Virus record (IMG/VR): IMGVR_UViG_3300049217_000071
Coordinates: 204,345 to 268,344 of that record
Length of the DNA: 64,000 bases
Direction: 5' to 3' (one strand)
The position numbers and the translations under genes are program-made. Each line of letters begins with the position of its first letter. Within the stretch, counting starts at the first letter, position 1. The notes beneath the pieces are model-generated. The model made no database searches, was not told the DNA's origin, and saw only the letters and a program-made list of their open reading frames with translations. Of the stretch, positions 21,113 to 62,403 are shown piece after piece.

Positions 21113-21886
21113 ATGAAACTCCGAGAGCTACTAGATATGATGCAAAAAACTGCTGTCGAAATTGGTGCCTCTGCTCCAATGATTTGCGGTGGTACGCCCA
21201 GAGATAAGTTTCTTGGACGTTTGGAAAACATTGCAGATATCGATGTAACGACCGGTGATAAGACGGTAGACTATCTTTCCCAAGAGTTTGCTATCAAGTT
21301 GCGTAAGCAATTCAACATTACCAGAAAAACGATGGAAGACGGTCATAGCACCATTTTTGTGGGTAGCTTGAAGGTGGATTTCTCATCCAATTTCATGGTG
21401 CCCAATATCGACACCATCCTGGGTCAGATGAACATCCCTAACCCTTCCGATATGCAAAGAGAGATGTATAGTCGAGACTTCACTTGCAACGCTCTATTGC
21501 TGTCGCTAGATCTCAAGAAGATTACCGATCCTACGGGGCACGGCTTTCAAGACATTCGAGACCGTAAAATCAAGACTTGCCTATCGCCTGAGATTACTCT
21601 TACCTCTAATAGAAACCGTGTCGTCAGGGCCATCTATTTGGCTTGCAAGTTGGATTTCGATATCGATGAGGCTATTATCGATTACGTGCGAAAGAACCCT
21701 CAGACAGTCAAGATATCCACTACTAAATCAATGTCAGATAAGCTAACAGAAGCTTTTACCAGAGATGCCGATAAAGCTTCTAAACTGATTACTAGAATGG
21801 GTTTATGGAATTACATTCCTATCAATGAAAAGATGTATCCATACTATCAAGCACAACTGAAAGGTAATCTCAATGTCGGTCAATAA
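21113..21886 (+). CDS. tRNA nucleotidyltransferase/poly(A) polymerase-family head domain (atypical)
   Basis: GGTPRD...DIDVTT, SRDFTCNAL, DPTGHGFQDI, RVVRAIYLA. The motif normally reading EDxxR reads SNRNR. Confidence 0.85.
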   Translation: MKLRELLDMMQKTAVEIGASAPMICGGTPRDKFLGRLENIADIDVTTGDKTVDYLSQEFAIKLRKQFNITRKTMEDGHSTIFVGSLKVDFSSNFMVPNIDTILGQMNIPNPSDMQREMYSRDFTCNALLLSLDLKKITDPTGHGFQDIRDRKIKTCLSPEITLTSNRNRVVRAIYLACKLDFDIDEAIIDYVRKNPQTVKISTTKSMSDKLTEAFTRDADKASKLITRMGLWNYIPINEKMYPYYQAQLKGNLNVGQ

Positions 21887-23207
21887 GAAGGCTTATTTTC
21901 AAGGTGGGGGCGGAGTCAACGAACCTACGCCAGGCAAAAAGAAATACAAGTCAGATCCGGCCCTGGTGGTGCAGCCCCGTTTTAAAGAGCCATTTTATCG
22001 CAACTACGATTTGTATACGATTCCAGGAATGGAAGAGGTGGGTCCTGGCACCGGTTGGCATGGCCTGCAAAATTATAAAAGCGTTCAGAACTTCTTGAAA
22101 GATCGAAGAAAGCGCCTGCAACCCCGTTATGTAGCCGATGATTCTTGGCAAATTGATTCAGGGGAAAGAGTCAAGAAGAACCCAGACAAAAAAGCCAGAA
22201 TGACTATTCTAGAAAGAATCATCAAACAAGCGGTAGCCTGTCAAGATTCGGATATTGAGTATTCTGATGGAAGAGACGCTTGGATTTGCGGCAATTGCTT
22301 ACACATGGGACCAAATGCCGGAGGTCCAACTCCATCTGTCAAGGAGCTACACGCTGGTAAAAATCATAACTCGGATAAGATAGATTGGCGAAATGGCCAC
22401 TATGAAAATGACCCTAAGTATCTGGCTCTCAAAGAAGAGAGGCGCCACAGAGATGAAAACGATGGTCCCAATTTCGATTATGGTCATGGGGCTTATGACG
22501 CCATGAACAAAGGCGAAAAGATGAAGACTATCACCGATTTCAAGCGCACTAGCCCAGGTGCCCTAATGGGTGTCAAAGCTGATCATATGATGGCACCTAA
22601 AGAACACGGCACCAGTATTTACAACTGGAAGAATAGTCCTTATCAAGGAACTCCGGGTGCCAAGAACAAGAGAAAGAAAGATACCAACAATATCGATTTC
22701 CCCATTGATGAAGAAGTAAATCATCAAGGTGAAATGGTGTATCCCGGAGAAGAGAACTATCAAGCTCCTAAGCACTTAGTTGGTCCCGCAGGACCTCCTG
22801 GTGATGTCAGCACCTATCCTGGTGATGTAGGGCCAACCGACCAATCTTCCTACATCAACTCCGCTCAGATAGCCGGAGAGCATTCTTATCTTCCCAAGTC
22901 AGATGAAGAGTCTAGATCCGATGAGGCTTTGGATTTCGGAAGAGATTATACAGACGAAACTCTCTTAGGCCGCCCTAATGGTGGGGGTGAGTCTTTGTCT
23001 GATGAGATGCAAGATGACGATAAAGAAATGGATTTGGATGCGCTAGAGGCTAAGTATCTAGGATCCACAGAAATTGGATTATTTGGCTTGCCAGATGGGG
23101 TAGATCCCGAAGGCCATGATGCCGATCAAACCGAACAAATAGAACAGCCTTTTACTGGCACATCTGATATTGGCACTCAAATGTATGAAGACAAATGGAA
23201 CATCTAA
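21873..23207 (+). CDS. Hypothetical acidic protein (probable virion protein)
   Basis: The N-terminal KKAYFQGGGGVNEPTP module is shared with the protease-scaffold. Confidence 0.8.
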   Translation: MSVNKKAYFQGGGGVNEPTPGKKKYKSDPALVVQPRFKEPFYRNYDLYTIPGMEEVGPGTGWHGLQNYKSVQNFLKDRRKRLQPRYVADDSWQIDSGERVKKNPDKKARMTILERIIKQAVACQDSDIEYSDGRDAWICGNCLHMGPNAGGPTPSVKELHAGKNHNSDKIDWRNGHYENDPKYLALKEERRHRDENDGPNFDYGHGAYDAMNKGEKMKTITDFKRTSPGALMGVKADHMMAPKEHGTSIYNWKNSPYQGTPGAKNKRKKDTNNIDFPIDEEVNHQGEMVYPGEENYQAPKHLVGPAGPPGDVSTYPGDVGPTDQSSYINSAQIAGEHSYLPKSDEESRSDEALDFGRDYTDETLLGRPNGGGESLSDEMQDDDKEMDLDALEAKYLGSTEIGLFGLPDGVDPEGHDADQTEQIEQPFTGTSDIGTQMYEDKWNI

Positions 23208-23265
23208 AACCAAGCAATATCATTGCATATAACCATATGAAGAAAGCAGACCCAGAGGTATCTCA

Positions 23266-24228
23266 ATGACTTTACAATCCCAAGCCCAAGAGCTATTCGT
23301 TATGGATATGAGCCCGCCTAAGGCTTCGCAGTTGCCAGCTATGGATACTCATATGATGGACGAGCAGCAACACGAGCATCACCACGAAATGGAAAGTGGC
23401 CACCACATGATGGGAGGCCCAGCCGCCATTGAAGTGGGTGAACCAGTTGATATCTCTATCGTAGTAGAAGAGTTGCCAGGCGCACCAGCCGGCACCAAAG
23501 ACCCTGAGCCGATGATTGAGGTTCAAGAGGAACCTATTCACGCCACCGAAAAAGAAGATGCCAATGATGCGAAGAAAAGCGACAAGGGCGGCAAAGGCGA
23601 AAAGTGGGATTGGGCTAAGCAAGGTCCACACGGTTTCGTGGCTTGGATCAAGAGTAGAATCGAAGATGTGCCACAGCACTCTGGTTATGATTCTGCCGGT
23701 CTAGAACGTGCTATGGCTTATATGGAAAGAGTGGACAACGAAATCTCCAAGGCTATGAGAATGGACTTGGATGGTGAACTAGACGCTAACAAGATTGAGA
23801 AAGTGCGTTCCGAGTTAGATGAAGGTATCGCTAGACTACAAGCTCGTCTTGATAAAGTCAAGGACGCTAAGAAGTCCTCCAAAAAGCGTAAGAAGTCCGC
23901 TGAATATGAAATGGACAGCGAAGGGTTTGTCAAAGAAGCTCAGAAGATTACTGGTGTGCAAGGCGTTTACGTCACCGTTCCACTTCTCATTTCTAGAGTA
24001 GCTCGTGTATGTGTCAACGGCACCGTATCAGCAGGTCACGACATTGAAGACTTGTATGCACGTCAAGTCAAGATGTATAATCTTGACAAGCGTGAGCAGG
24101 CTGAAGTAATGCAGCTTTTGTTTGATATGGGATACCCACTTCGTCAAGATCGTGGCTTTATGCCAGACGACAACTTGGAAATTTGGGACAGCGACAATAT
24201 GGATTGGGCCGCCAACTATAGAGGTTAA
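23266..24228 (+). CDS. Hypothetical protein (probable virion protein)
   Basis: RBS gagg; His-rich patch; KKSAE and VKEAQ motifs. Confidence 0.8.
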   Translation: MTLQSQAQELFVMDMSPPKASQLPAMDTHMMDEQQHEHHHEMESGHHMMGGPAAIEVGEPVDISIVVEELPGAPAGTKDPEPMIEVQEEPIHATEKEDANDAKKSDKGGKGEKWDWAKQGPHGFVAWIKSRIEDVPQHSGYDSAGLERAMAYMERVDNEISKAMRMDLDGELDANKIEKVRSELDEGIARLQARLDKVKDAKKSSKKRKKSAEYEMDSEGFVKEAQKITGVQGVYVTVPLLISRVARVCVNGTVSAGHDIEDLYARQVKMYNLDKREQAEVMQLLFDMGYPLRQDRGFMPDDNLEIWDSDNMDWAANYRG

Positions 24229-24230
24229 TA

Positions 24231-24893
24231 ATGGCTAAACAACCAAGACAACAGCCGGTCATTCACCGTCAGTCTGAAGAAGAGGTCAGTGAAGACCATT
24301 GGCTGCGTCAGTTCGAGCAGAAGCTACAAAAGACCAGCGTGCAACCACGTGGTAATGAGTCTTTGTTCGAGCAGATCAATACCATTATGAATGGCAAATC
24401 TAAGTATCCTTCCGTGCAAGCTGCCGTGGATGATATGATGCACCGTAGTGGTTTGTCTGGTTATCTAGACAATGTCAAGACTTCCGAAACAGAAGCTCCT
24501 ACCCAGCCGAAAAAAGTGGCCCAGCAAGTGGATCGAGCTAGACTGCAAGAAGTCAAAACTAATCCGAAGACACCTAAGGTCATCGAAGAGAAGCCAAGCA
24601 TTCTACACACTCTGGAAAACATCATTCGAGACTCCAAGGGTAATCTTTCTGTGCCAACCATCATCAGCCGTCTTCACGCTTTGCATGCCTCTGATGTGAC
24701 GGATGAATCGGCTTGGGACGATGATAAACTCATTCGTTTGGTTAGCTATTTCAACATCAAGGCCAAGAAAGACAACCCAGCTAACTTCGAGAATTTCGAT
24801 AACCTGGGCAAGCGAGATCATTCTACCGCCGACTCCGATATTGATCCATCCAACACAGACGCTTTCAATGTGTTGATGCCTGCCAAACTTTGA
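24231..24893 (+). CDS. Hypothetical protein
   Basis: 220-aa ORF; its 3' end overlaps the convergent HNH gene. Confidence 0.75.
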   Translation: MAKQPRQQPVIHRQSEEEVSEDHWLRQFEQKLQKTSVQPRGNESLFEQINTIMNGKSKYPSVQAAVDDMMHRSGLSGYLDNVKTSETEAPTQPKKVAQQVDRARLQEVKTNPKTPKVIEEKPSILHTLENIIRDSKGNLSVPTIISRLHALHASDVTDESAWDDDKLIRLVSYFNIKAKKDNPANFENFDNLGKRDHSTADSDIDPSNTDAFNVLMPAKL

Positions 24894-25579
24894 GGTTTTT
24901 CTGGTGGATATTTAGCGAGAGATATCTTGCTACAATTACAGTTGAAACATAAAGCCTGCAATCCTAGGTTTTGTGGGAATTCGTGATTTATTAACCAACG
25001 ATAAAAGGCTGATCCGGTTTTGTATCCATATTTACGACGTTGTTCTGCTCCGTCATTATTTTTATGGTCGATGGTTAGTCGCTCGATTCTATCTTCTGAA
25101 CATTCTGCACAACAACCACCATATATTGCAATTACTATCTTCTTTTTCTGTAGTGCACGTTTATCTTTGTAAACGACATTTTTACTACAATTGCAGTTGT
25201 AGCATAGAACTTGGTATACATCTCTATTTATCAAATTGTTATACAAGTGATCAATTAGGTTTCCTGTCATTTCTCTACGATGGGCATTCCCACCACCATT
25301 GATGTGATCGATAGTGAGTTTGGTATAATCATCTTCTCCACAACCAGCGCATTGATTGCCATAAAAAAGAATAACCGCACTACGTCTCATACGTTGTCTG
25401 TCAAGTTGTTTTTTACCGTAGTTAGGATCACTTTTATGGTATGTTCTGCCGTACTCTCGGAAACAGGGCGTGCATAGATAATTGCTGCGTTTGACCAGAT
25501 ATTTGAGCCAGTTTTCCCTGGTTAGCTTTACATTGCATTTGATACATCTTTTGAGACTACGATTTTTTTGTGAGTGCAT
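24818..25579 (-). CDS. HNH homing-endonuclease-like protein with two HNH domains
   Basis: CAGC...LTIDHINGGG...VLCYNCNCSK and CAEC...LTIDHKNNDG...ALCFNCNCSK; N-terminal Zn ribbon. Confidence 0.85.
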   Translation of the reverse strand: MHSQKNRSLKRCIKCNVKLTRENWLKYLVKRSNYLCTPCFREYGRTYHKSDPNYGKKQLDRQRMRRSAVILFYGNQCAGCGEDDYTKLTIDHINGGGNAHRREMTGNLIDHLYNNLINRDVYQVLCYNCNCSKNVVYKDKRALQKKKIVIAIYGGCCAECSEDRIERLTIDHKNNDGAEQRRKYGYKTGSAFYRWLINHEFPQNLGLQALCFNCNCSKISLAKYPPEKPQSLAGINTLKASVLDGSISESAVE

Positions 25580-25600
25580 ATAGAGTAATATATCACTATT
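25580..25600. promoter_or_regulatory. Compact divergent promoter region between the HNH gene and terminase
   Basis: AATAtatcacTATT (25587-25600) fits AATA-N6-YAT on both strands. The minus strand also reads TGATATAT-N8-ATG into the HNH gene. Confidence 0.5.
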
Positions 25601-25606
25601 CCTAGT

Positions 25607-27484
25607 ATGCCCACTCTAGAAATCGAAAATAAAGACATGTTCAATAAGCTGAAGAAACAGCTAATGATGTACGATCCTGTTTATTTCGCAGAGGAGAATC
25701 TAACCTTAGAAGGTAAGCCCTTCACCTTACACGGCAACGGATATAAGCCCTTCAGCGAAATCTACCGATACGTAGGAGTCAAAGCTTTAGAGCCAGATTC
25801 TAAACCGATTCTCATCGTGAAAGGCCGTCAGGTTGGCGCTACTACTATGGCTAGTGCCCTAGAGATGTATTTTATGGGCTGTGGGCTTTTTGGCAACGGT
25901 ATTCGTCCACCTATCCGTGTCATTCACGCTTTTCCACAGTTAGAACTAGCTGCCGCTTATTCTAAGACCAAGCTCAATCAGATTATTGCTACTGCCAAAA
26001 TCCCAGAAGGCACCAATACAACCAAAGGTTCCCGCCCTAAGTCTTGTATGCAACTTCTCTTGGATCAATCAGCAGCTACCAACGATTCCTTGCACTTCAA
26101 GCAGTTTGCAGGCGGCAACCATTTATGGGTAGAGTCTACTGGTATTGATGCTGACAGAATTATGGGTCGTACTGCCGACATCATCTTTTTTGACGAAGTG
26201 CAGAAGACGACTGCCCAGGCTATGGGAAATGCTCTCAAGATTTTGACCAACGCCGCCTATGGTAGACCTACTAAAGGCGTGCAAGTTTACTTCGGAACCC
26301 CGAGACGTAAAGGCTCTGATTTTCACGGTATGTGGGAGAAGTCTTCTCAACAGTATTACTACCTAGGATGTGAGAAATGCGAAAAGCACTTTCCATTTTA
26401 CACTCCAGGCTCTGATGACTGGGAAAAGATTTGGATCCATGGTAAGGTAGTCAAGTGCCCATTGTGCGGCCACGAGCAAGATAAACTAGAAGCTCAAGAA
26501 CGTGGCAAGTGGGTTGGTCTGAAAGATGCCAGCGAGTCCGATTTCATTGGGTTTCACATCAATCAACTCTACATGCCAAGATTTACCCGTGAAGACATAG
26601 AAAATGAAAAGCCGGGCAAGCATCCTATCAACACGGAGAGAGTTTATCAGAACGAAGTTTTGGGAGAGTTCTTTCAAGGAGATTCCAGTCCTATTACTCC
26701 AGAAGAGATTCGTTTGCTATGCAGAGATGAGGGTAGAAAATTCAGTGCTCGTATTGTGCCCACCAAGGGATTGACGCAGCAACTAGCTATTCTGGGCATC
26801 GACTATGGTGCTCGTTCCGATTTGGAGCAGTTAGCTCAGCCCGATAAAATCAAAGCTACCGGGCAATCTTACAGTACGGCCGTAGTTCTATTGACTAAGG
26901 GCCCAGGATTACTTTCTATCGAGATGGCTCTCAAGTTCAAGCGCAATGACCCGGCCAGTAAGAAAGGTATCATCGATCAATTGATGAGGCAATACAACAT
27001 CAGTTTGGCGGTAGGAGATATTGGTTATTCCAATGACTTCTCTTATGACTTGCACCAAACTTATGGAGACAAATATCTCGTCTCTCGTGCTCATAACAGA
27101 GTCAATGATCACGTCAAGGTCAATGCAGATGCCTTTCCTAAAGAGATCATCTTTGAGAGAGATTTCTATATCGGTGAACTGTATGAACAAATGAAGAAGG
27201 GTATGATCAGATTTCCTTATGGTGATTATGAGAAGATAGCTTGGTTAATTGATCATTGTTGCAGTATGGAACTCAAGCCCTCTATTTCTAGATACGGAGA
27301 TCCTAGCATCCATTATGTCAAGGGCGGCACCCCAAACGACGGTTTCATGGCGTTATTGAACGCCTACATTGCCTATAAGTTTTTGGTTAGTCGAGGCTTT
27401 ACCAATAACAATCCACTCTTGCAAACCACTAAAAATGCCAATAAACCATTGGTTATCTCTGGGTATGTGCCCCGAAGAATATGA
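25607..27484 (+). CDS. terL: Terminase large subunit
   Basis: KGRQVGATT (Walker A), RIMGRTADIIFFDEVQ (Walker B), FGTP coupling motif, CEKC...CPLC Zn ribbon as in lambda gpA-type terminases, nuclease GIDYG. Confidence 0.92.
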   Translation: MPTLEIENKDMFNKLKKQLMMYDPVYFAEENLTLEGKPFTLHGNGYKPFSEIYRYVGVKALEPDSKPILIVKGRQVGATTMASALEMYFMGCGLFGNGIRPPIRVIHAFPQLELAAAYSKTKLNQIIATAKIPEGTNTTKGSRPKSCMQLLLDQSAATNDSLHFKQFAGGNHLWVESTGIDADRIMGRTADIIFFDEVQKTTAQAMGNALKILTNAAYGRPTKGVQVYFGTPRRKGSDFHGMWEKSSQQYYYLGCEKCEKHFPFYTPGSDDWEKIWIHGKVVKCPLCGHEQDKLEAQERGKWVGLKDASESDFIGFHINQLYMPRFTREDIENEKPGKHPINTERVYQNEVLGEFFQGDSSPITPEEIRLLCRDEGRKFSARIVPTKGLTQQLAILGIDYGARSDLEQLAQPDKIKATGQSYSTAVVLLTKGPGLLSIEMALKFKRNDPASKKGIIDQLMRQYNISLAVGDIGYSNDFSYDLHQTYGDKYLVSRAHNRVNDHVKVNADAFPKEIIFERDFYIGELYEQMKKGMIRFPYGDYEKIAWLIDHCCSMELKPSISRYGDPSIHYVKGGTPNDGFMALLNAYIAYKFLVSRGFTNNNPLLQTTKNANKPLVISGYVPRRI

Positions 27485-27566
27485 AAGCGGCCTAAATACT
27501 TGGGTTTTCTACTGATATATCACATATAGGGTATTAGTAGAGAGTATAGTGGAACTATGAGGCAAT

Positions 27567-29480
27567 ATGGGCAGCATTAAAAAATCAGGTTTAGGGAATG
27601 ATCAATCCTTCTCAGCAAGGTTTATTTCCAACAGATCTAATATTCCACACGTTAGTGCGATTATGGCTAACGGTATTTCTGAAGAGAGAAGGGTTATTCT
27701 TTCTGATGAAGTCGATCAAGGTTTCTTTCGAGACGGCTCTGGCCCCAATTACAACAAGCTTTCGATGGAAAATGCAGAAACGACCAATGCCCGTGTAGTG
27801 TCTTCCGCTCATTCTCAGCCATCCATCATTTCCAAATACGCTCAATCTGTCAGCAGTGTAGGTGGTATGTTCCGTGGTATCCACGGAGACTCTGTCAAAC
27901 AGACTCCAGAAGTATATTCTCCTCTTTGGTTGAATTCTAACCTCAATCTTCCACGTGATCGTGCTACTATCAATGCTTGGTGCCGCAGCTTTTTCGCCCT
28001 CAATCCCTTTGTGCATAACGCTATCAGCTTGCATAGCACTTATCCAATCAGTAAATTGAACATCAAGTCTCCCAACAAGGACATCGAAAAGTTCTTCAAT
28101 GACATGATCGAAGAAATCGATTTGATGAACATCTGCGTGCAGATCGCACAAGAGTATTTTTTGCTGGGTGAAGCCTTTGTTTACGCTGAATTAGACGAAG
28201 GTAAGGGAAAATGGAGCCGCCTTCACATCCAAAACCCAGACTTCATGATTGTCAAGCGTACGGTAGTAGCTTCCGAGCCTATCATCATGCTTCGTCCTGA
28301 TGAAAACCTCAAGAAGATCATCTTCTCTAACCGTCCCACCGATATTGAGCAGCGTAAGCAGCTCAACGCTCACATTATTGACTCCGTGAGACGTGGTGAG
28401 AACATTCCGCTCGACAATTTCCACGTTTCTCACTTAGCTCGTAGGATTAGCCCTTATGAAATCAGAGGCACCGGTCTCCCCGTTTGTATTTTCCGTCAGT
28501 TGATGCTCTTTGACAAGCTAAGAGAGTCAAAGTATGCTCAAGCTGACAATATGATCAACCCACTTACCATCGTCAAGATTGGTTCGGCCGATTACAAGCC
28601 AACTTTTGCTGACTTGGAAGCTTGGAGAGGCGTCTTTGAGGGAGCTCAATACGATAAGGACTTCAAGATCTTTACCCACGAAGGTGTAGATGTTACCAGG
28701 GTCGGTTATGGCCAAGGTATCTACGATATCTCTAACGATATCACACAACTCATCAAGGAAATTTACGTAGGTTTACAGGTTCCACCTGTTATGATGGACG
28801 GTGGTGCGGATACTACTTACGCTAATGGTGGTGTAGCTTTAGATGTGTTGCGTCAGAGATACATGCAGTTCCGTAATATGATGTCTCACTGGCTGAAGAC
28901 CAAAATCTTCGCCCCTATCTCTAAGATTCAGGGATTCTACGATTACTCGGGTGGTGATAAGCAACTCATCGTTCCAGAAATCGATTGGAACCACATGAGT
29001 TTGTTTGATGCAGGCGACTACATCAACGGACTCGTGACTTTGACTCAAGGTGGTCCAGATCAGAAGAGAGTTTCTTTGCAAACTCTGTATCGTTCTATGG
29101 GCCTAGAGTTTGAGGACGAAATGCGTAAGATGCGTAAGGAAAATATCCAGCAAGCTATCTCCAAGAAAGAAGTGGCCGCTTTGGAAAAGATGGATCTCAA
29201 TGCTCTACGTGCTTTGGATGATGAGGACGAGATTCCAGAGCCATCTACCAGTGACCAAGCTGTGGAACCAGCCGTTCCGGGTGAAGTGGCGGGCGGACCT
29301 CCAGGAACACCTCCAGATGGTATGCCTGATCTAGGATTACCGGGTGGCGCACCAGGTGGTGGGCCTCCCCCTCCGCCCCCACCAGGTCCTCCACCACCAG
29401 CCGCTCCACCAGGAGGCGGAGCAGGCAGTCCAGGTGGCGGTGGCGCATCCCCAGCCGCTCCGGCAGCTCCTCCAGGCTAA
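27567..29480 (+). CDS. Portal protein
   Basis: Follows terL. Helical core with YFLLGEAFVY, IQNPDFM, HLARRISPYEIRGT, IYVGLQVP; Pro/Gly-rich tail. Confidence 0.85.
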   Translation: MGSIKKSGLGNDQSFSARFISNRSNIPHVSAIMANGISEERRVILSDEVDQGFFRDGSGPNYNKLSMENAETTNARVVSSAHSQPSIISKYAQSVSSVGGMFRGIHGDSVKQTPEVYSPLWLNSNLNLPRDRATINAWCRSFFALNPFVHNAISLHSTYPISKLNIKSPNKDIEKFFNDMIEEIDLMNICVQIAQEYFLLGEAFVYAELDEGKGKWSRLHIQNPDFMIVKRTVVASEPIIMLRPDENLKKIIFSNRPTDIEQRKQLNAHIIDSVRRGENIPLDNFHVSHLARRISPYEIRGTGLPVCIFRQLMLFDKLRESKYAQADNMINPLTIVKIGSADYKPTFADLEAWRGVFEGAQYDKDFKIFTHEGVDVTRVGYGQGIYDISNDITQLIKEIYVGLQVPPVMMDGGADTTYANGGVALDVLRQRYMQFRNMMSHWLKTKIFAPISKIQGFYDYSGGDKQLIVPEIDWNHMSLFDAGDYINGLVTLTQGGPDQKRVSLQTLYRSMGLEFEDEMRKMRKENIQQAISKKEVAALEKMDLNALRALDDEDEIPEPSTSDQAVEPAVPGEVAGGPPGTPPDGMPDLGLPGGAPGGGPPPPPPPGPPPPAAPPGGGAGSPGGGGASPAAPAAPPG

Positions 29481-29555
29481 AGAGCTAAATCCATAGATAA
29501 TCCCTCTACATATTAGAGCATACTTTTAGTAATTGCACAAAGTAAAGGGACTGCT

Positions 29556-30794: not shown

Positions 30795-30796
30795 GA

Positions 30797-31945
30797 ATGG
30801 CCAATTTAGGATCCAATTTTTATCCTAAACTAGTTCAGATGACCACTGAGCTAGGGATGAAACCAGAAGATCTCATCGCAGTGATGACGTCTGAATCTGG
30901 TATGAATCCGGACGCTCATAATCCTGGTGGTGCTTCTGGCCTGATTCAATTTATGCCTGGCACCCTCAAAGGCTTAGGATTTTCTGGGAGTACTGCCGAG
31001 TTTAGGCAGTTATCTGGAGAAGACCAACTTCCTTGGATAGAGAAGTATATCAAACAACATATGGCCCAACAGGGTGGCAAATCATTTACCTCTGGTGGTC
31101 AATATTACGTAGCTAATCTCTGGCCGGTAGCTTTGCAACTACCAGGCGTACAACGAAGCGATCCTAATACTGTCATTCTAGAAAAGAATCCACAAGGACA
31201 GGGCGGATTTAGCCAAAAATATCTGGCTATCGGCTCTAAAATACCCGTATCAAATGAGGCTGCTGCCTATAAAGAAAACTACCCATTGTTTGACAAGGAA
31301 AAAAAGGGATACATCACATTAGGAGATCTAAATCGTCAGATAGATCAGAATAGGGGCACTCACATTTATCATAATAGCGTTTCCTCTATGCAAAATTCTA
31401 CTGGATATCAGCCAACCAATCATCCAGTATTTCCGCAGCAAAACTTACCGCGTAAAGCGCCGGCTAACACCAATATGTTGGCCGAACTTAGTGGCCCTGG
31501 CGATCTAGACACCATTCTCAACAGATTCATTTCGATGTTTTCCGTAGCTTCCACAAAGATTTCTCTCAAGAGACTCTACAAGGAAGCTCTACCATCTCAC
31601 GATATTCTCATCCAAATCAAAGCTCCTGATTATACGAGCGCTATCGAGTTCTCTCGAATTTTGTGCACAGCATTAGATGAGGAACTGCTCTCTACTTCTT
31701 TCACACACACGGATAGTCGTCAGGTGGAAGTGGAGTGCTCTATCCAAGGTCCCGCCAAGGAATGTTTTGCGGCCGTTCAGCAGTTAGCTCAGGCGGTAGC
31801 CGAAACTTTTCAAGATGCCACCGTTAAAATAGGTGGAATTGCAATTAAGACCAATTGCATTATGAATAAGAAGTCATTCTATCAACCTATTAGTTTGAGA
31901 ACAGCCGACACTAACTATAGAAAATTCATCCTCAAATTTGTCTAA
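30797..31945 (+). CDS. Lysozyme-like/SLT lytic transglycosylase domain fused to an unknown C-terminal domain
   Basis: LIAVMTSESG (catalytic Glu) and GASGLIQFMP. Confidence 0.8.
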   Translation: MANLGSNFYPKLVQMTTELGMKPEDLIAVMTSESGMNPDAHNPGGASGLIQFMPGTLKGLGFSGSTAEFRQLSGEDQLPWIEKYIKQHMAQQGGKSFTSGGQYYVANLWPVALQLPGVQRSDPNTVILEKNPQGQGGFSQKYLAIGSKIPVSNEAAAYKENYPLFDKEKKGYITLGDLNRQIDQNRGTHIYHNSVSSMQNSTGYQPTNHPVFPQQNLPRKAPANTNMLAELSGPGDLDTILNRFISMFSVASTKISLKRLYKEALPSHDILIQIKAPDYTSAIEFSRILCTALDEELLSTSFTHTDSRQVEVECSIQGPAKECFAAVQQLAQAVAETFQDATVKIGGIAIKTNCIMNKKSFYQPISLRTADTNYRKFILKFV

Positions 31946-31951
31946 GGAAAT

Positions 31952-32368
31952 GTGATGCCATCAGAAAAAGAAGTCATAGATGCAATTAAGTTAGTCCAAG
32001 GCTCTGGCAAAACATTCGCTGAGTTCTTGGCCGAATTATTCAAGGACAAAATCATCGAAGTCTATGTAGGTGATGCCTATGAAGACGTCAGCACCGAACA
32101 AATCTCTACTACTTACCCTGCCGTCTTCTGTGGCAAGGTAGTGGCCGCTTACCGTGAATGTCTAGTTCTCAACTGTGCCTTCGTCAATAACAACCGCCAT
32201 TTACAATTAGGTAATTTGATGTTTGTCAATGAGAGAGCCATCCGAGCCCTCAATGAAGTCGATGGTCTCGGCACTCTAGAAGATATGATGCTTCGCAGCA
32301 AAGAAACTTTGGATATCAAGCGATCTTTTCCAAATACTAAACCACATGTCAAACCACCTACCAAATGA
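31952..32368 (+). CDS. Hypothetical protein
   Basis: 138-aa ORF with RBS aagga. Confidence 0.75.
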   Translation: MMPSEKEVIDAIKLVQGSGKTFAEFLAELFKDKIIEVYVGDAYEDVSTEQISTTYPAVFCGKVVAAYRECLVLNCAFVNNNRHLQLGNLMFVNERAIRALNEVDGLGTLEDMMLRSKETLDIKRSFPNTKPHVKPPTK

Positions 32369-33108
32369 ACGATGTCAACACTATCATACAACTGGCCAAC
32401 GCCTATGAAAATGGGTGTTTAGAGAGCCTGGTCAAGCTTGCAAAAATTCGCAAGATGCCAGACGGTAGGTATCGTGTATTGTCTCCAACGGGTAAGAATC
32501 TAGGGACTTATAAATCTCAAGAGGCTGCTAAGAAGCGTCATGAGCGAGAAGAGTTCGTCAAGAAATTTGATCATTCTAACGCAGAAGATGGGGCCAAGAT
32601 CATTGACCTAACTGACATTGATGAATTCAGCTATTCAGCTATTATGCGTAAAGTTCGTGCTAAATGTAGTCCCGAACAGGTTAGGCAGTTTCTTGTTTTA
32701 TACAAGAACCAATTTGATAGAGCTGTCAAGGGCAAGCTACACAGGCCAGAGCGAATAGCTTTACAAACAGCTATGATCAAATTCAATAAGCTGTATAAGG
32801 TCAAGATTGATAAGAAGATGATCAAGAGTGCCGCTATTTCAGAATTGGGCAACTCTGAGCAAGTAGGGCAATATCTATCTGACATTGTCAAATTCGTTCT
32901 CAATAGATTGCCATTAGATAAGCGTCAACACGCCTTAGATAGTCTCAAACAAAAGTTTAGCACCTTGAGCGAACTAGATATTTCCAGCAAAGTGTTGCCA
33001 CAGTCTTCCGCGCTGGGCCAATCTATTACCTTCGTCAAAACCGTCTTGTTCAACCACGATGCCCGCTACGTTCGAGAAGTTCTAAACAGCCTGGTGAAAC
33101 ATCTATGA
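32365..33108 (+). CDS. Hypothetical protein (probable virion protein)
   Basis: Contains RYRVLSPTGKNLGTYKSQEAAKKR, a small module I recognise from other phage proteins. Confidence 0.75.
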   Translation: MNDVNTIIQLANAYENGCLESLVKLAKIRKMPDGRYRVLSPTGKNLGTYKSQEAAKKRHEREEFVKKFDHSNAEDGAKIIDLTDIDEFSYSAIMRKVRAKCSPEQVRQFLVLYKNQFDRAVKGKLHRPERIALQTAMIKFNKLYKVKIDKKMIKSAAISELGNSEQVGQYLSDIVKFVLNRLPLDKRQHALDSLKQKFSTLSELDISSKVLPQSSALGQSITFVKTVLFNHDARYVREVLNSLVKHL

Positions 33109-33872
33109 TTCAACGATTTCGCAAGGTGGCGCCTGGCTTGTATCGTGGTTCCGCACCCGACCCGCAAGATGTTATGAAGCTCAAAGAACAATTGGGCATT
33201 CGCAAAATTGTGAGTCTAGATAAAGAGACTGGCGAAAAGATTGATCGTGCCTGTAAGTTATTGGGTATCAAACACATCAAACTATATTTGGATGGTAGTC
33301 GTAAAACTCTATTGCACTTTCTATCTCAAGATCTAAAAAAGGTTTTTTTAGAAGGTGGCCCCACTTTTATGCATTGCCACGAAGGCAAAGATAGAACTGG
33401 ATTTGTTTCTGCTTTAGTGAAGTGTAAGTATTTAGGAATGGATCCTGAAAAAGCTATTGAAGAGGCTAAATCCTTAGGCTTTGGTATTGGTGTGGATCCC
33501 TCTATTATACATCTCTACGAAAAGATCATTCGCTCTTGTAAAAAGGTCAAAGATACTAATAATGCCGATATAGTGTCTACTGAAAGAGAATACCAAGGAG
33601 ATAATCGTGATGGCTTTTTGGATGAAGTCAATCAAGGCTCCTTCGCCCCATATCTAGATCATACCCGTCAAAACCCAATGGACGCCCTTTATCCTTATAC
33701 GCTAGATCAATCACCTACCCGTGAAAACTATCCAGATACATCATTATTTCAGTATGATCCTAGTAAGGGAGACGCTGTTCCCAATGTTGGAGAGTTTGAC
33801 AACGATGCAGGTCAGCGTGGTTTCGGCCCTTCCGAAAATTACAATGGATTCTTTTCAGATGTAGGTAAATAA
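33105..33872 (+). CDS. Protein tyrosine/dual-specificity phosphatase-family protein
   Basis: LYRGSAP, GIRKIVSLD and the P-loop HCHEGKDRTG (CX5R). Confidence 0.88.
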   Translation: MIQRFRKVAPGLYRGSAPDPQDVMKLKEQLGIRKIVSLDKETGEKIDRACKLLGIKHIKLYLDGSRKTLLHFLSQDLKKVFLEGGPTFMHCHEGKDRTGFVSALVKCKYLGMDPEKAIEEAKSLGFGIGVDPSIIHLYEKIIRSCKKVKDTNNADIVSTEREYQGDNRDGFLDEVNQGSFAPYLDHTRQNPMDALYPYTLDQSPTRENYPDTSLFQYDPSKGDAVPNVGEFDNDAGQRGFGPSENYNGFFSDVGK

Positions 33873-34522
33873 TGATCAAGAAGGCATACAGTATACAAAT
33901 GAGTTATGACGTGTCTGATAGTGAAAAACATCAGGCAGAGAAGGCACTTTTGTATTTCAATGTTACCGAGAAGTTGCTAATGCAAGCCTCGGACTACATG
34001 AATGTGATGAAGACTCCTTTTAAGGATAATCCAGACATGCAGCCAGATGACATTATGAAGGCCCGCGCGGCTATCCGTCGTTTTAGAGATCATTGCATTG
34101 ATGATTTCGATAAGTTCAAGCGTTCTGCTTTTCAGTGCGTCAATGCTATGCAGACTTTTTCCACTGACACCCAAACTCTCAAACTAATGAAGTCTTTCAT
34201 CACCTCTATTGACGAATTAGAGACAAAAGTGAACGCTTTCTCAGATATCTTCAATGACTTGCAATCCAAAGACTTTGCCAAGGACGTGGTAACGCACATC
34301 GAAGACATTCAGAAGCAGTGTGATGATATCGAAGAAATCATTGACGAAAGAGTCAAAAACCATATTCAGACTAATATTCTAGCTACCAGTTGGGTAGATG
34401 CTATTAGCAGCGATTTACAGATGAAGATTGAGCAAAAAACTCCTCTTATATTGGATCTTTACAATAAAAGAGAAGATCAGCTCAACGATGCTATTGAAGA
34501 AAGGGGCACAGTGGGGAACTGA
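33872..34522 (+). CDS. Hypothetical helical protein
   Basis: Begins MIKKAY; 216 aa. Confidence 0.78.
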   Translation: MIKKAYSIQMSYDVSDSEKHQAEKALLYFNVTEKLLMQASDYMNVMKTPFKDNPDMQPDDIMKARAAIRRFRDHCIDDFDKFKRSAFQCVNAMQTFSTDTQTLKLMKSFITSIDELETKVNAFSDIFNDLQSKDFAKDVVTHIEDIQKQCDDIEEIIDERVKNHIQTNILATSWVDAISSDLQMKIEQKTPLILDLYNKREDQLNDAIEERGTVGN

Positions 34523-34543
34523 GGTTTCGGCTTCAAGGATGGT

Positions 34544-34605
34544 AATATCCTTACATAATAAATGAAGTTGAGGCAACGCTGCAAATTGTAGCAATATTGC
34601 CTTAT
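34544..34605 (+). promoter_or_regulatory. Two copies of the AATA-N6-YAT motif upstream of the protease-scaffold unit
   Basis: AATAtccttaCAT at 34544 and AATAttgcctTAT at 34593. Confidence 0.5.
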
Positions 34606-34637
34606 AATTATGTAGAGTCTCCGTTCGGAGAGAATAT

Positions 34638-34799
34638 ATGTCATTTATCAAACACGGTGATGGAAAAATAGTAGATGTTCTCGATGAGACCGATCTGACT
34701 GCTGAGCAAAAACAAGCGGTCAAGAAGATGTCGGAACAACTCGTCAAGCAATCTGACGATGCAACTGATTCTTCTAAAACGAAGAAGTCAGGGAGTTAA
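34638..34799 (+). CDS. Small hypothetical protein (53 aa)
   Basis: ggag RBS; MSFIKHGDGKIVDVLDETDL...KKSGS; below the length cutoff of the ORF track. Confidence 0.65.
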   Translation: MSFIKHGDGKIVDVLDETDLTAEQKQAVKKMSEQLVKQSDDATDSSKTKKSGS

Positions 34800-34804
34800 T
34801 ATAC

Positions 34805-37800
34805 ATGACCATAATCAAACTGGGCGAAGCACACGAAATCAAACTAGAGTCGGCGGAGTCCTGTATTCCAGAAGTGAGCCCCGAGGTTCTAGAGAACTTT
34901 AGGAAGTTTGCTCAAAACCTCAAGAAGATCGCCCCTAAGGCTGAAGACTTCTTGTATTTCTCTGCCGTTATGATGCATGCTGCCGAGGCCTCTTGTCTCA
35001 ATGACGATGGCACTCCTAAACTAAATGTTCGAGGTGAAGCTGTCCAAGTAGGCTGGGATACCAGTAATGGAACTTGGAAATGGACTACCAATGATCCTAG
35101 CATTAAGCCTTATAAGAATTCTAATGGGGATATCTTCCCAGAATTAGAGTTAATCAAAGCTTACAAGAAATGGAAGCACAAGCCCCTCTGCGTGGATCAT
35201 AAATCGAATTCGGTTGATCACGTCAGGGGCTTTATTGTTGATACTCACTACGATCGTAATCTCAAAAGAGTGATCGCATTATGTGCCTTAGATAAGGCTG
35301 GGTTTCCTCAACTAGCTCGTCAAATTTCTACTGGCGTTTCTAACTGCGTATCTATGGGTACGGCAGTGGGTCGTGCCATTTGCTATGATTGTCAAAGAGT
35401 CGCCCGCACGGAAGCCGATTTCTGCACTCATATGAAGAACAAGTCTTGCTACGGTGAAATAAACGTAGACCTCAATCCTATTGAACTTTCGATTGTGGTC
35501 AACGGTGCCGATCCTAGAGCCAGCATCAAGCATATTATCGCCGCAGCAAATACTCTTAATACCTATGTGGAGAATAAACAAAAGGAATTAGCTAAGTTAG
35601 CTGATCTTAACTTCAATGCTTCATTAAGTGTTGATGACCCACAAGGACAAGAAGGTTTGAGCCATACTCAGTTTCAAGTCAATGGCAATAATCTAGAAAA
35701 GTTCAAAGCTGACCTAGATCAAGCCTTTGCTAAACTATCTGAAATAGCCGGTACCGTAAAAAATACTGAAAAAGATACTAATCTTTCTGCATCTAATCAG
35801 TCGTCGGGTTCAATTGCGATGGATGAAGGCGCCCCGACTGATTCTGGATTGGCTCTCCAAACTCCGCAGACTGCAAGGTTTGCATCAGCAAGTGTAGAGG
35901 CGGAATCTCTAGCTGAACTTCACGAAATAACAGCCACTATTGAAGCAAAGCTAAATCAAATGAAGCAGGGCTTAGAAAAACTAGCAGCTACTTCTACAAA
36001 AACACAAGAGGAAAATATGTCTGGATCAGAAAAACTAAAAGCACAAGGTTATTTCCAGGGCGCTGGTGGTGTTAACGAGCCTACTCCAGGCCAAGTTAAG
36101 TACCCTAAGGACCCACTTAATGAGCAACTTCGTGAACACGAAGACAAGCAGATGGTGGGCGAGCCTCCTTTCCCAGAAGTGGGACCAGTGGACGGCATGC
36201 ATCCTTCTCCAAGTTCGGCTGATCCTTCCGACGAGTTAGCTCGTAAGAAGATGTTAGCTCGTGCTGATCTAGAAGAGCGCGCTATGAAGCGTAATGCCAT
36301 CGTTCAGTTGGCAAAAGAAGCTCTAGAGAGCAAGTCTTACTTTCAAGGTGGCGGTGGCGTCAATGAGCCAACCCCAAACAAGCCAAAGTATCCAAAGGAC
36401 AAGCTCAACGAAGAGCTACGTGAATACGAAGACAAGCAAATGGTTGGTCAACCACCATTCCCAGGCGTAGGTCCTGTCGACGGTCTTCACCCATCCCCAT
36501 TCTCCGCAGATCCAAAGGATGAATTGAAGCGTAAGAAAATGCTCGCCAGAGCTTCCTTGAGAGCCAGATTCGTCAAGGCTGCCAATGGTGACGGTACCCA
36601 GAACAAGTCCAAGAGTGCTTGGGAAGTTTTCCTAGGCGACAAGCTCCTATTGACTGCTTCTGTCGATGAACTATCCGGTGGACACACCGACATGTTGTAT
36701 GACAGCATTGCTACCAAGGAATTTGGTGGTAAATTGATCGAAAAGGTCAAGGTCAATGGTGCTCCAGCCGTAGCCCAACTAATCAAGAAGGCTCAGCCTA
36801 TGCCTCCAGCCCCTCCGGGTGGTGATGCAGGTGCCCCTCCAGAAGCTCCAGACCCAGATGCTGGTCCTCCAGTAGAAGATGCTGGTAAGTCTGGTGATCC
36901 AAAGCAACACGCTATGGAATTGGCTAAGACAGTTAGAGACACTGCCTCCGATTTGATGGAAGCTGTTCGCGCCCTTACCGGCGAGAGCGCTGAAATGGGT
37001 GGTGAAGGTTCTAGCGCACCAGAAGGTGGCGTTGGTGGACCAGCAGGTGGACCAGCCGCGATGGCTGATGACTCCTCAGGTTCCGGCTCTGCTACAGGCA
37101 AGACCTCTACCGCTGAAGGTTTTAGTACTGCAACTCTCAATAACTTGAGAAAGGAACTCAACAGTTCTCTAACTCTCGCTATGAAAGAAGCTGTCGCTGA
37201 ACTCAACGATCACGGTCAAGAATTGGACATGATTGTCAGCATGTACGACAAGGGTGCTGTTACCGATCAAAACTCTGACTTCGTCAACAACGTCGTAACC
37301 GACGCCTTGAATGAAGCCAAGACTACCGTGGCTGACGGATTCAAGCTAATGACCGCTTTCGTCAAGTATGCCCGTGGTACTCAAGCTATTGTCAAGCGTG
37401 CTGAGATCGAAACCGAACTTCAAGCACTTGCAACTGAAGGAGATACTATGAGCGATACAAAAGATAGTCACTCCGCAGATGGCGGTGACTTAATGGGACT
37501 AATCAACGACACCAACGCAGATCTAGACGCTGTCAAGATGATGGTTGATGATAATGACCACGAAGGTGGCATGGAAGGACTAGATGACTTAGATGACTTA
37601 GGTGATCTAGGACTCGATGGTCTATCCGAAGGTTTAGTTGATGATAACGCTGGTGTGATGGTTGATACCCCAGCCAAAGCCGCAGAGGTTACCAAAATGA
37701 ATCCAGATGCTAGTGTAAAAGTTGCCTCCTTTGATACCAAAGAGGGCCGCGCAGCTCTAAGAGCCAAGTTGGCCGCTGATGCTACCGGCAAGGAAGAGAA

Positions 37801-55155: not shown

Positions 55156-55222
55156 CAATGCCACTATCTATGAATAAAAAAGTATGTTATTCGTAGGATC
55201 TTCCACACATACAGGATAAAAT

Positions 55223-62401: not shown

Positions 62402-62403
62402 TT

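What the first reader, a model, noticed from the sequence alone, without database searches (positions are those of the whole stretch)
21873..36555. YFQGGGGVNEPTP module shared by a separate gene and the scaffold repeats
21873 begins MSVNKKAYFQGGGGVNEPTPGKKKYKSDP and later has EEVGPGTGWH. The scaffold has KAQGYFQGAGGVNEPTPGQVKYPKDP...PEVGPVDGMH and KSYFQGGGGVNEPTPNKPKYPKD...PGVGPVDGLH. A near-invariant 13-mer in genes 14 kb apart, each preceded by Lys-containing K-x-A-like sequence, suggests a conserved binding peptide exposed after cleavage.
Basis: seen in the sequence. Interest (0 to 1): 0.6.

Follow-up and report, generated by a model that had tools for sequence, protein, structure and literature searches.

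The report
Shared docking peptide in huge-phage scaffold
A clade of uncultured huge phages keeps the same short Pro/Gly/Tyr-rich peptide twice in its capsid protease–scaffold protein and once at the very start of a separate disordered protein; it is most likely a shared docking tag for capsid assembly, but its binding partner is still unknown.

Summary
The 13-mer and a downstream VGPxxGxH occur exactly three times in the 268-kb phage genome: at residues 8–63 of a 444-aa protein (21873–23207), and twice in tandem, 96 aa apart, in a 1229-aa protease–scaffold fusion (34805–38494).

It is not a recent DNA copy. About two thirds of the identical residues use different codons.

It is conserved. All 10 related IMG/VR records tested have two copies in the scaffold and one at the extreme N-terminus of the syntenic small gene. 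In a 1.8-billion-protein library, 124 of 150 listed hits have two copies (none has three), and about 19 short proteins have one copy at residues 2–10.

Across the family the Gly run is a variable loop. The conserved core is bipartite: [N/S]-K-x-[A/G/S]-Y-[F/Y/W]…E-P-T-P-G-x-x-K-Y-x-x-[D/E], then G-P-x-x-G-x-H.

AF2 leaves both anchors disordered beside well-folded scaffold domains, so there is no docking within the chain. A module–MCP complex test gave no answer.

Best reading: a shared linear docking motif that lets the scaffold and an accessory disordered protein engage the same procapsid partner (MCP or portal, unresolved). Cleavage at K-x-A is untested. I rate it a new variant of a known kind, of moderate interest.

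The parts
21873..23207 (+). Gene 1 (P0001, 444 aa): accessory protein predicted to be disordered. N-terminal module, variable middle, conserved acidic C-terminal region.
   Evidence: no Pfam or PHROG family. (alignment of 13 orthologues). (Atlas model pLDDT 0.38). Its start overlaps the stop of the upstream CCA-adding enzyme gene (21113-21886) by 14 nt.
21882..22061 (+). Module copy in gene 1 (residues 4-63). Anchor A is NKKA-YFQGGGGVNEPTPGKKKYKSDP (13-mer at 21894-21932). Anchor B is VGPGTGWH (22038-22061).
   Evidence: In all orthologues the start codon lies 6-7 residues before the Tyr.
21873..22232 (+). Conserved N-terminal unit of gene 1 (residues 1-120): the module plus a basic helical segment ending I-I-K-x-A.
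   Evidence: The only two K-x-[AGS] sites conserved in gene 1 are at residues 5 and 118, flanking this unit.
22692..23204 (+). Conserved acidic/aromatic C-terminal region of gene 1 (IDFPIDE ... LDFGRDY ... GLPDGVD ... YEDKWNI). It is unique in the genome.
   Evidence: its profile hits only itself.
34805..38494 (+). P0002, 1229-aa prohead protease-scaffold fusion.
34877..35599 (+). N-terminal prohead (head maturation) protease domain, about residues 25-265. Invariant H132, S183 (V-S-M-G) and near-invariant H209.
   Evidence: phrog_18299, E 1.8e-11. 34% identity to Bacillus phage G gp19. AF2 confident for residues 50-225. Best fold hits are T4 gp21 (5JBL) and then herpesvirus proteases, with weak E. 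Invariant columns.
36038..36325 (+). Scaffold repeat unit 1 (residues 412-507). Anchor A 13-mer at 36050-36088, anchor B at 36179-36202, then a helix.
36326..36589 (+). Scaffold repeat unit 2 (residues 508-595). Anchor A 13-mer at 36338-36376, anchor B at 36467-36490, then a helix ending RFVKAA.
36557..36784 (+). Small folded alpha/beta domain following the repeats (residues 585-660).
   Evidence: AF2 pLDDT 83-94 in both runs.
37760..38491 (+). Conserved helical C-terminal domain of the scaffold (residues 986-1229). By analogy it is the likely MCP-binding end.
   Evidence: Its profile also hits ORF 3996-5165.
4803..5102 (+). C-terminal ~100 aa of ORF 3996-5165, similar to the scaffold C-terminal domain. 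This is a second scaffold piece shared with another protein.
   Evidence: E 2.5e-15. Conserved in orthologues of two relatives at E ~1e-12.
25607..27484 (+). Large terminase subunit (context).
   Evidence: phrog_675, E 1.8e-54.
27567..29480 (+). Portal protein (candidate partner).
   Evidence: phrog_16240, E 3.4e-49. 75-89% identity in relatives.
49466..50479 (+). Major capsid protein, 337 aa (candidate partner).
   Evidence: phrog_2522, E 3.6e-78. 90-97% identity in 80 relatives, with matches starting at this ATG. 54% identity to phage G gp27 from residue 45 on.

Best explanation
The element is a bipartite linear docking motif of about 60 aa. Anchor A is [N/S]-K-x-[A/G/S]-Y-[F/Y/W]-x-G-(variable loop)-E-P-T-P-G-x-x-K-Y-x-x-[D/E]. 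Anchor B is G-P-x-x-G-x-H. A linker of 25-30 aa between them is free to differ.

The phage's prohead protease-scaffold fusion carries two copies in tandem between its protease domain and its helical scaffold body. A second, intrinsically disordered head-module protein (gene 1) carries one copy at its extreme N-terminus.

The proposed mechanism is that all three copies bind, in extended conformation, the same site on a procapsid component: the very highly conserved MCP, or the portal. The scaffold would use two copies for avidity or positioning. Gene 1 would use its single copy to be recruited into the assembling procapsid, or to compete there with the scaffold, while its conserved acidic C-terminal end engages something else.

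Shown here: the motif's existence, its copy number, its positions, purifying selection, clade-wide conservation, synteny, predicted disorder, and the absence of docking within the scaffold chain.

Inferred: that it binds a partner, which partner, and encapsidation of gene 1. Whether the prohead protease cuts at the small residue before the Tyr is open.
For: (1) There are exactly three copies in the genome, each with both anchors.

(2) Synonymous sites between copies are saturated while the residues are kept: 11-13 of 17-19 identical residues use different codons. This indicates an old duplication under strong purifying selection on the peptide, not on the DNA.

(3) All 10 related records (181-481 kb) have exactly 2 copies in the scaffold and 1 in a small gene 13-29 kb upstream. 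In that gene the module always starts 6-7 residues after the start codon, while the rest of the ORF varies from 107 to 444 aa.

(4) Library-wide there are 200 clusters. 124 of the 150 listed have two copies mid-chain and none has three. About 19 short proteins have one copy at residues 2-10.

(5) Gene-1 modules form one clade with support 100.

(6) The module region is about 75-80% identical among relatives. That is close to the protease domain (83-86%) and portal (82%), and well above the flanking scaffold segments (56-64%).

(7) In AF2 runs of residues 1-700 and 400-1229 with family alignments, the protease domain, the 585-660 domain and the C-terminal helices fold confidently, but both anchors of both copies stay below pLDDT 50. 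This is the behaviour of motifs awaiting a partner in trans. P0001 as a whole is predicted disordered.

(8) Precedent for scaffold pieces shared with other proteins exists within this same genome: ORF 3996-5165 carries a copy of the scaffold C-terminal domain.

(9) Text-verified precedents elsewhere: 80alpha SP and SaPI1 CpmB share a C-terminal motif that binds the same MCP site (PMC5644958). The T4 capsid targeting sequence directs internal proteins to the scaffolding core (PMC3012670). HSV UL26 and UL26.5 share the scaffold's C-terminal part, including the MCP-binding C-terminus (PMC12474303).
Against: There is no direct evidence of binding. The one complex prediction (gene-1 module with the MCP) gave 'no answer', and no portal test could be run.

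Only one gene family besides the scaffold carries the motif. It is therefore not a general cargo tag of the kind seen on T4 internal proteins or encapsulin cargo.

Strong conservation of a Pro/Gly-rich segment would also be expected for a protease-processing cassette or for a scaffold self-assembly element.

No member of the clade is cultured, so there is no virion proteomics and no cryo-EM. It is not even shown that gene 1 is a virion or procapsid component.
Confidence: 0.5

Rival explanations
1. Protease-processing cassette. The conserved residues are the recognition and exosite region for the fused prohead protease. It would cut at the small residue before the Tyr ([N/S]-K-x-[A/G/S]|Y) and at the K-x-A that ends each unit. 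This would excise the ~96-aa units from the scaffold and remove a 6-7-aa leader from gene 1. Conservation would then reflect protease specificity rather than a third partner. This is the 'exposed after cleavage' part of the reader's idea.
For: K at -3 and a small residue at -1 are conserved in all three contexts. The gene-1 leader is uniformly 6-7 aa, about the minimum needed to fill P-side subsites. A free N-terminal Tyr can only arise by cleavage. In gene 1 the only two conserved K-x-[AGS] sites flank the N-terminal unit exactly. In the window's scaffold, unit 2 ends in RFVKAA. The protease domain and the module are conserved to a similar degree. Herpes assemblins, which share this fold, cut at defined R and M sites in their own scaffold fusion (PMC12474303).
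Against: The window's own scaffold copies break the K(-3) register (KAQG|Y, SKS|Y). K-x-[AGS] is conserved at 23 positions in the scaffold, so it is not diagnostic. Cleavage sites are normally 3-5 residues, not a 60-aa bipartite motif with a second anchor 40 aa downstream. AF2 did not place the module in the protease cleft in cis. The nearest structural relative, T4 gp21, cuts after Glu (from general knowledge, not tested here). This rival is not exclusive of the main explanation.
Confidence: 0.15
2. Homotypic scaffold-core element. The modules associate with each other or with other scaffold molecules in trans to polymerise the internal core. Gene 1 would be a minor core protein that co-polymerises through its paralogous module, in the manner of minor T4 core proteins.
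For: Two copies per chain would allow chain extension or cross-linking, and a one-copy protein would act as a capper or incorporated minor component. Copy number is strictly 2 and 1. Gene 1's whole N-terminal ~120-aa unit parallels a scaffold repeat unit: an extended part followed by a helix.
Against: Pro/Gly-rich extended segments seldom self-associate. AF2 saw no packing of the two tandem copies against each other or against any scaffold domain in either half. However, monomer predictions cannot exclude oligomer-only contacts.
Confidence: 0.15
3. The motif recruits a host factor (for example a chaperone or protease) to the scaffold and to gene 1, rather than binding a phage capsid component.
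For: Only that the motif is an exposed, disordered, conserved linear peptide and that no phage partner has been identified.
Against: The relatives come from many different metagenomes. Motif conservation tracks the phage's own highly conserved head proteins. Both carriers lie in the head-morphogenesis module.
Confidence: 0.07
4. Non-functional remnant. Under this reading, gene 1 arose by partial duplication of a scaffold repeat, and the similarity is just retained ancestry.
For: The two genes are clearly homologous over this stretch.
Against: Synonymous sites are saturated while the residues are invariant. The motif is conserved over about 200 clusters at 50% identity with fixed copy number and fixed N-terminal position. 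It is far better conserved than flanking sequence in both genes.
Confidence: 0.02

Closest known systems
Phage 80alpha scaffolding protein gp46 and SaPI1 CpmB (shared C-terminal RIIK helix-and-hook binding the MCP N-arm; PMC5644958)
   Same: A short motif of the scaffolding protein is also carried by a second, otherwise unrelated small protein, and the two engage the same capsid site. The second protein thereby joins or competes in procapsid assembly.
   Different: In 80alpha the motif is C-terminal, about 16-21 aa, and helical, and the second protein belongs to a satellite. Here the motif is about 60 aa, bipartite, Pro/Gly/Tyr-rich and predicted non-helical. It is internal and doubled in the scaffold, N-terminal in the second protein, and both genes belong to the same phage. 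Binding to the MCP is not shown here.
Herpesvirus UL26 (protease-scaffold) / UL26.5 and the scaffold's internal Tyr/Pro portal-interaction motif (PMC12474303; Yang & Baines 2009, listed there as ref. 93; only its title was seen)
   Same: There is an N-terminal assemblin-fold protease fused to a scaffold, and scaffold sequence is shared with a second protein. An internal Tyr/Pro-containing scaffold motif is needed for portal interaction.
   Different: UL26.5 is a nested in-frame gene, not a separate locus. Its shared part is the whole scaffold C-terminus. There is no sequence similarity to the herpes motif. Portal binding could not be tested here.
Bacteriophage T4 capsid targeting sequence (CTS) of internal proteins (PMC3012670)
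   Same: It is an N-terminal peptide on otherwise diverse or variable proteins that directs them into the scaffolding core of the prohead. The protease of that system has the fold that best matches this one (T4 gp21).
   Different: The T4 CTS is about 10 aa, is carried by several cargo proteins, and is not a repeat of the scaffold protein. Here a single accessory gene family carries the motif, and the scaffold itself has two copies.
Lambda gpC/Nu3 and P2 gpO type protease-scaffold fusions (from general knowledge)
   Same: The gene architecture is an N-terminal prohead protease and a C-terminal scaffold in one polypeptide, encoded between portal and MCP.
   Different: Those proteins are about 280-440 aa and have no known tandem Pro/Gly docking repeats. 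This one is about 1100-1670 aa.
Encapsulin cargo-loading peptides (from general knowledge)
   Same: They are short, disordered terminal peptides that dock cargo to the interior of an HK97-fold shell.
   Different: Their consensus sequence is different, they are usually C-terminal, and they occur on many cargo types. No scaffold or protease is involved.

Membership tests
Prohead protease-scaffold fusion (assemblin / T4 gp21-fold protease + scaffold) | N-terminal domain homologous to prohead maturation proteases | tested here: met
   phrog_18299 'head maturation protease', E 1.8e-11, residues 119-213. 34% identity to phage G gp19. The best Foldseek hits of the AF2 model are T4 gp21 (5JBL, prob 0.82), then HCMV, VZV, PRV, HSV-1, KSHV and EBV proteases, with weak E because the query was a 700-aa model.
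Prohead protease-scaffold fusion (assemblin / T4 gp21-fold protease + scaffold) | Conserved catalytic His/Ser/His-type residues | tested here: inconclusive
   H132 and S183 (V-S-M-G) are invariant and H209 is near-invariant in 30 sequences. The order and spacing resemble assemblin-type triads (from memory). No residue-level structural superposition was done.
Prohead protease-scaffold fusion (assemblin / T4 gp21-fold protease + scaffold) | Long helical scaffold body, with the gene placed between portal and MCP | tested here: met
   AF2 predicts long helices over residues 700-1180. Gene order is TerL, portal, scaffold, MCP.
Shared scaffold/accessory MCP-binding motif (80alpha SP / SaPI1 CpmB type) | The same motif is present in the scaffold and in a second protein | tested here: met
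Shared scaffold/accessory MCP-binding motif (80alpha SP / SaPI1 CpmB type) | C-terminal amphipathic helix plus hook | tested here: not met
   The motif is internal (scaffold) or N-terminal (gene 1). It is Pro/Gly-rich and predicted to be coil.
Shared scaffold/accessory MCP-binding motif (80alpha SP / SaPI1 CpmB type) | Binds the MCP | tested here: inconclusive
   The complex job of module with MCP scored 0.36, 0.00 and 0.00, with the verdict 'no answer'.
T4-type capsid targeting sequence | N-terminal position on the targeted protein | tested here: met
   The module starts 6-7 residues after the start codon in 13 of 14 loci (L061's start is inferred) and in about 19 library representatives.
T4-type capsid targeting sequence | Carried by several different cargo proteins | tested here: not met
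   Only one non-scaffold gene per genome carries it, in 11 of 11 genomes.
T4-type capsid targeting sequence | Removed by the prohead protease after assembly | not testable with these tools
   No proteomics exist for any member. The K-x-[AGS] pattern is not diagnostic.
Herpes-type scaffold portal-interaction motif | Internal Tyr/Pro-containing scaffold motif in a protease-scaffold system | tested here: met
   Position and composition. This is an analogy only, with no sequence homology.
Herpes-type scaffold portal-interaction motif | Binds the portal and is needed for its incorporation | not tested
Any curated protein family (Pfam, PHROGs) | A profile match for the module or for gene 1 | tested here: not met
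   P0001 has no Pfam or PHROG family, and the module region of P0002 is unmatched. Ten gene-1-type representatives have no informative Pfam family.

The most novel reading that the evidence does not exclude
The motif is a natural, portable encapsidation or docking tag specific to a large clade of uncultured huge phages. On this reading, a fixed '2 + 1' system lets the protease-scaffold and a disordered two-ended adaptor (gene 1) compete for one receptor site on an almost invariant capsid component. Gene 1's acidic C-terminal end would bring a further partner into, or position it at, the procapsid. If so, the ~60-aa peptide would define a new class of capsid-interior (or portal) ligand and a handle for loading foreign proteins into huge-phage capsids.
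Probability: 0.3. Interest if true: 0.6.

Novelty: new variant of a known kind. Interest (0 to 1): 0.45.

Why it matters
Assembly of very large phage capsids is poorly understood, and no member of this clade is cultured. A strictly conserved, unannotated linear motif gives a concrete and cheap experimental handle. It sits twice in the protease–scaffold and once at the N-terminus of a syntenic disordered protein. Experiments with peptides, GFP fusions or co-expressed capsid proteins could show how the scaffold is anchored and how accessory proteins are recruited. The motif also supplies a sequence signature (two copies mid-chain, or one at residue ~4) that lets two 'hypothetical protein' families in huge-phage metagenomes be annotated. 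If the partner is the capsid shell, the peptide could serve as an encapsidation tag.

Tried and rejected
(1) Complex prediction of the gene-1 module (alignment A1) with the MCP (alignment A4) scored 0.36, 0.00 and 0.00, with the verdict 'no answer'. It counts neither for nor against binding.

(2) Cis docking was tested with AF2 of P0002:1-700 and P0002:400-1229. The anchors stayed below pLDDT 50 in both runs. Docking onto the protease domain, the 585-660 domain or the C-terminal domain within one chain is therefore not supported.

(3) K-x-A as a diagnostic cleavage motif was rejected as evidence in the scaffold, where 23 K-x-[AGS] sites are conserved. It is kept only as a lead for gene 1.

(4) Reading YFQ|G as a 3C/TEV-like site, or VNE| as a T4-like x-x-E site, was rejected. 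Q, V, N and E all vary in family members (YWLG, YYLG, GT-EEP, NPNTP), and Pro follows the Glu.

(5) A function at the DNA level was rejected. The copies are only about 60-65% identical in DNA.

(6) Pfam, PHROGs, PDB sequence search, the ESM Atlas and source names gave nothing for gene 1 or the module.

(7) A literature search for the motif found only engineered TEV-site/Gly-linker constructs.

(8) A search for informative domain fusions among one-copy proteins found none.

(9) A tree of 301 module copies separates gene-1 copies cleanly but does not resolve scaffold copy 1 from copy 2 family-wide (46 label changes on 67 columns). I therefore do not claim that the tandem duplication predates the whole family, only that every member has two copies.

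(10) PMC2715747 (Yang & Baines 2009) is not held. Its content is cited only by title, through the reference list of PMC12474303.

Full report
**What is there.** The window is the last 64 kb of a single 268,344-bp virus contig. It holds a head-morphogenesis module on the + strand:
- a CCA-adding enzyme gene (21113-21886);
- gene 1 (21873-23207, P0001, 444 aa);
- two unknown ORFs and an HNH endonuclease;
- large terminase (25607-27484) and portal (27567-29480);
- several unknown ORFs, including an SLT-lysozyme protein;
- a 1229-aa protein, P0002 (34805-38494);
- homing endonucleases and unknown ORFs;
- the major capsid protein (49466-50479).

P0002 is a prohead protease–scaffold fusion. Its N-terminal ~265 residues match a PHROG head-maturation protease (E 1.8e-11) and phage G gp19 (34% identity). 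They fold confidently in AF2. The best structural matches are T4 gp21 and then a series of herpesvirus assemblins, with weak E-values because the query was a 700-aa model. The rest of P0002 is largely long helices and low-complexity linkers, with a conserved helical C-terminal domain.

**Checking the observation.** A six-frame scan of the whole genome, allowing four substitutions, finds the 13-mer three times and nowhere else. Each copy is followed 35-40 aa later by VGPxxGxH. The two scaffold copies are 96 aa apart and belong to a tandem repeat unit: an extended Pro/Gly-rich part followed by a helix.

A profile built from scaffold copies alone finds gene 1 at E 4.6e-11 among all genome ORFs. 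At the DNA level the copies are only about 60-65% identical, and 11-13 of the 17-19 identical residues in the first anchor use different codons. This is therefore an old duplication kept by selection on the peptide, not a recent DNA copy and not a DNA-level signal.

**Conservation.** IMG/VR holds 57 loci with P0002 orthologues at 47-81% identity and 4 with P0001 orthologues. The motif is present in both families.

A profile search shows that every complete scaffold orthologue has two tandem copies, including the most diverged ones that a simple pattern missed. Searching ten whole related records (181-481 kb) with the module alignment gives exactly three matches in each: two in the ~1200-1580-aa scaffold gene, and one in a small gene 13-29 kb upstream. 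In that small gene the module starts 6-7 residues after the start codon in every case, while ORF length varies from 107 to 444 aa.

In a library of 1.84 billion representative proteins the profile finds 200 clusters. Of the 150 listed:
- 124 have two copies mid-chain (median length 1180 aa) and none has three;
- 26 have one copy, and about 19 of these are short proteins with the module at residues 2-10;
- the rest of the one-copy hits are scaffold fragments or alternative start calls.

Gene-1 modules form a single clade with support 100. All members with a source name are 'hypothetical protein' from metagenomes. Neither Pfam nor PHROGs covers the module or gene 1. The natural motif appears in no held paper. 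The nearest cultured phage, Bacillus phage G (MCP 54%, protease 34%, portal 33% identity), has a stand-alone protease and no module anywhere in its genome.

**What the unit really is.** Across the family the glycine run is a loop of variable length (GGGGVN, GT--EE, NGEGPNNPNT). The '13-mer' is therefore near-invariant only among close relatives. The conserved positions define two anchors:
- Anchor A: [N/S]-K-x-[A/G/S]-Y-[F/Y/W]-x-G … E-P-[T/S]-P-G-x-x-K-Y-x-x-[D/E].
- Anchor B: G-P-x-x-G-x-H.
- The linker between them has one form in scaffolds (LNEELRExEDKQMVGQPPFP) and another in gene 1 (ALVVQPRFKEPFYRNYDLYTIPG).

The module region of the scaffold is about 75-80% identical among relatives. 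That is close to the protease domain (83-86%) and the portal (82%), and well above the neighbouring scaffold segments (56-64%). The MCP is 90-97% identical.

Gene 1 has a conserved N-terminal ~120-aa unit (module plus a basic helix ending I-I-K-x-A), a variable insert, and a conserved acidic/aromatic C-terminal region that runs to the last residue. The protein is predicted to be disordered throughout.

**How it probably works.** In two AF2 runs with family alignments (residues 1-700 and 400-1229), the protease domain, a small domain at 585-660 and the C-terminal helices are confident. Both anchors of both copies stay below pLDDT 50. The motif therefore does not dock on any part of its own chain.

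Taken together, four properties fit a linear docking motif recognised in trans by one common partner in the assembling procapsid: strong purifying selection, fixed copy number, a fixed N-terminal position in a second protein, and disorder. The scaffold would use two copies for avidity or positioning. Gene 1 would use one copy to be recruited to, or to compete at, the same site, with its conserved C-terminal end free to bind something else.

Candidate partners are the almost invariant MCP and the portal. In this clade the MCP also has about 44 N-terminal residues that phage G's MCP lacks. A herpesvirus parallel exists for the portal: Tyr/Pro residues in the HSV-1 scaffold are critical for portal interaction (known here only from the title of a reference listed in PMC12474303).

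That scaffold pieces are reused by other proteins in this phage is supported independently. The C-terminal ~100 aa of ORF 3996-5165 match the scaffold's C-terminal domain (E 2.5e-15), and this is conserved in orthologues. By analogy that domain is the MCP-binding end.

**The cleavage idea.** K at -3 and a small residue at -1 before the Tyr are conserved in all three contexts. The gene-1 leader is uniformly minimal at 6-7 aa. In gene 1 the only two conserved K-x-[AGS] sites flank the N-terminal unit. This is compatible with processing at [A/G/S]|Y by the fused protease.

Against it, the window's own scaffold copies break the register (KAQG|Y, SKS|Y). K-x-[AGS] is conserved at 23 scaffold positions, so it is not diagnostic. 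Nothing here can show cleavage. I keep it as a non-exclusive rival or addition.

**Comparison with known systems.** Functionally the closest systems are:
- the 80alpha scaffold / SaPI1 CpmB pair, which share a C-terminal motif binding the same MCP site (PMC5644958);
- the T4 capsid targeting sequence (PMC3012670);
- herpesvirus UL26/UL26.5 (PMC12474303).

This element differs from all of them. It is a ~60-aa bipartite, non-helical Pro/Gly/Tyr motif. It is doubled internally in the scaffold and N-terminal in a single accessory gene family of the same phage, and it has no sequence relationship to any of them. I therefore class it as a new variant of a known kind. Its existence and conservation are well supported. 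Its mechanism is plausible but unproven.

**Limits.** No member is cultured, and there is no proteomic or cryo-EM evidence. Binding and encapsidation are inferred.

Noticed in passing
window 3996-5165 (+), especially 4803-5102: This 389-aa ORF of unknown function ends in a ~100-aa copy of the scaffold's conserved C-terminal domain (profile E 2.5e-15; the order of the two matching pieces differs). The same holds in orthologues of two relatives (E ~1e-12). It is a second case of a scaffold segment reused by another protein, possibly for co-encapsidation.
   Followed up: partly
window 49466-50479 and loci L093-L172: The MCP is 90-97% identical across the 80 best-matching relatives kept by the search (of 317 found). 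Their records range from fragments to 481 kb, while TerL (70-81%), portal (75-89%) and scaffold (47-81%) diverge normally. An almost invariant shell protein across genomes of very different size suggests that capsid size is set by something else, perhaps scaffold length (1100-1670 aa).
   Followed up: partly
genome G000:C1:44777-45439 (+), outside the window: A 221-aa ORF holds two tandem partial copies of the MCP's N-terminal third (about MCP residues 60-190; 45-60% identity, E 7e-28). It is an MCP-fragment paralogue of unknown role.
   Followed up: no
window 49466-49597 (MCP residues 1-44): The clade's MCP has about 44 N-terminal residues with no counterpart in Bacillus phage G gp27, whose alignment starts at residue 45. 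Phage G also lacks the module. The extension is a candidate docking site, but this is speculative.
   Followed up: no
window 39434-39994, 41753-42472, 58744-59622, and at least 5 more places in the genome; also 24818-25579 (-): A family of at least 8 GIY-YIG homing endonuclease genes is scattered through the genome. Two lie between the scaffold and MCP genes. An HNH endonuclease sits on the opposite strand just upstream of the terminase gene.
   Followed up: no
window 21113-21886 / 21873: Gene 1's start codon overlaps the end of a CCA-adding (tRNA nucleotidyltransferase) gene by 14 nt, which suggests translational coupling of a structural-module gene to an RNA-metabolism gene. In locus L061 the two reading frames are continuous stop-to-stop.
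   Followed up: no
window 54658-58982 and 60873-63852: There are two local paralogue families. One is 54658-55155 / 55223-56539 / 56607-58982, whose last member matches a PHROG virion structural protein. The other is 60873-61634 / 61634-62401 / 62368-63852.
   Followed up: no
locus L029 (scaffold 1583 aa) and representatives P0009, P0020, P0035, P0113 (1526-1665 aa): A subset of scaffolds carries about 350 extra residues N-terminal to the two modules. The two-copy rule still holds in them.
   Followed up: no
window 36557-36784 (P0002 residues 585-660): A small, confidently predicted alpha/beta domain (pLDDT 83-94) sits directly after the second module, and its fold was not identified. W606 is invariant in the 30-sequence alignment.
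   Followed up: no
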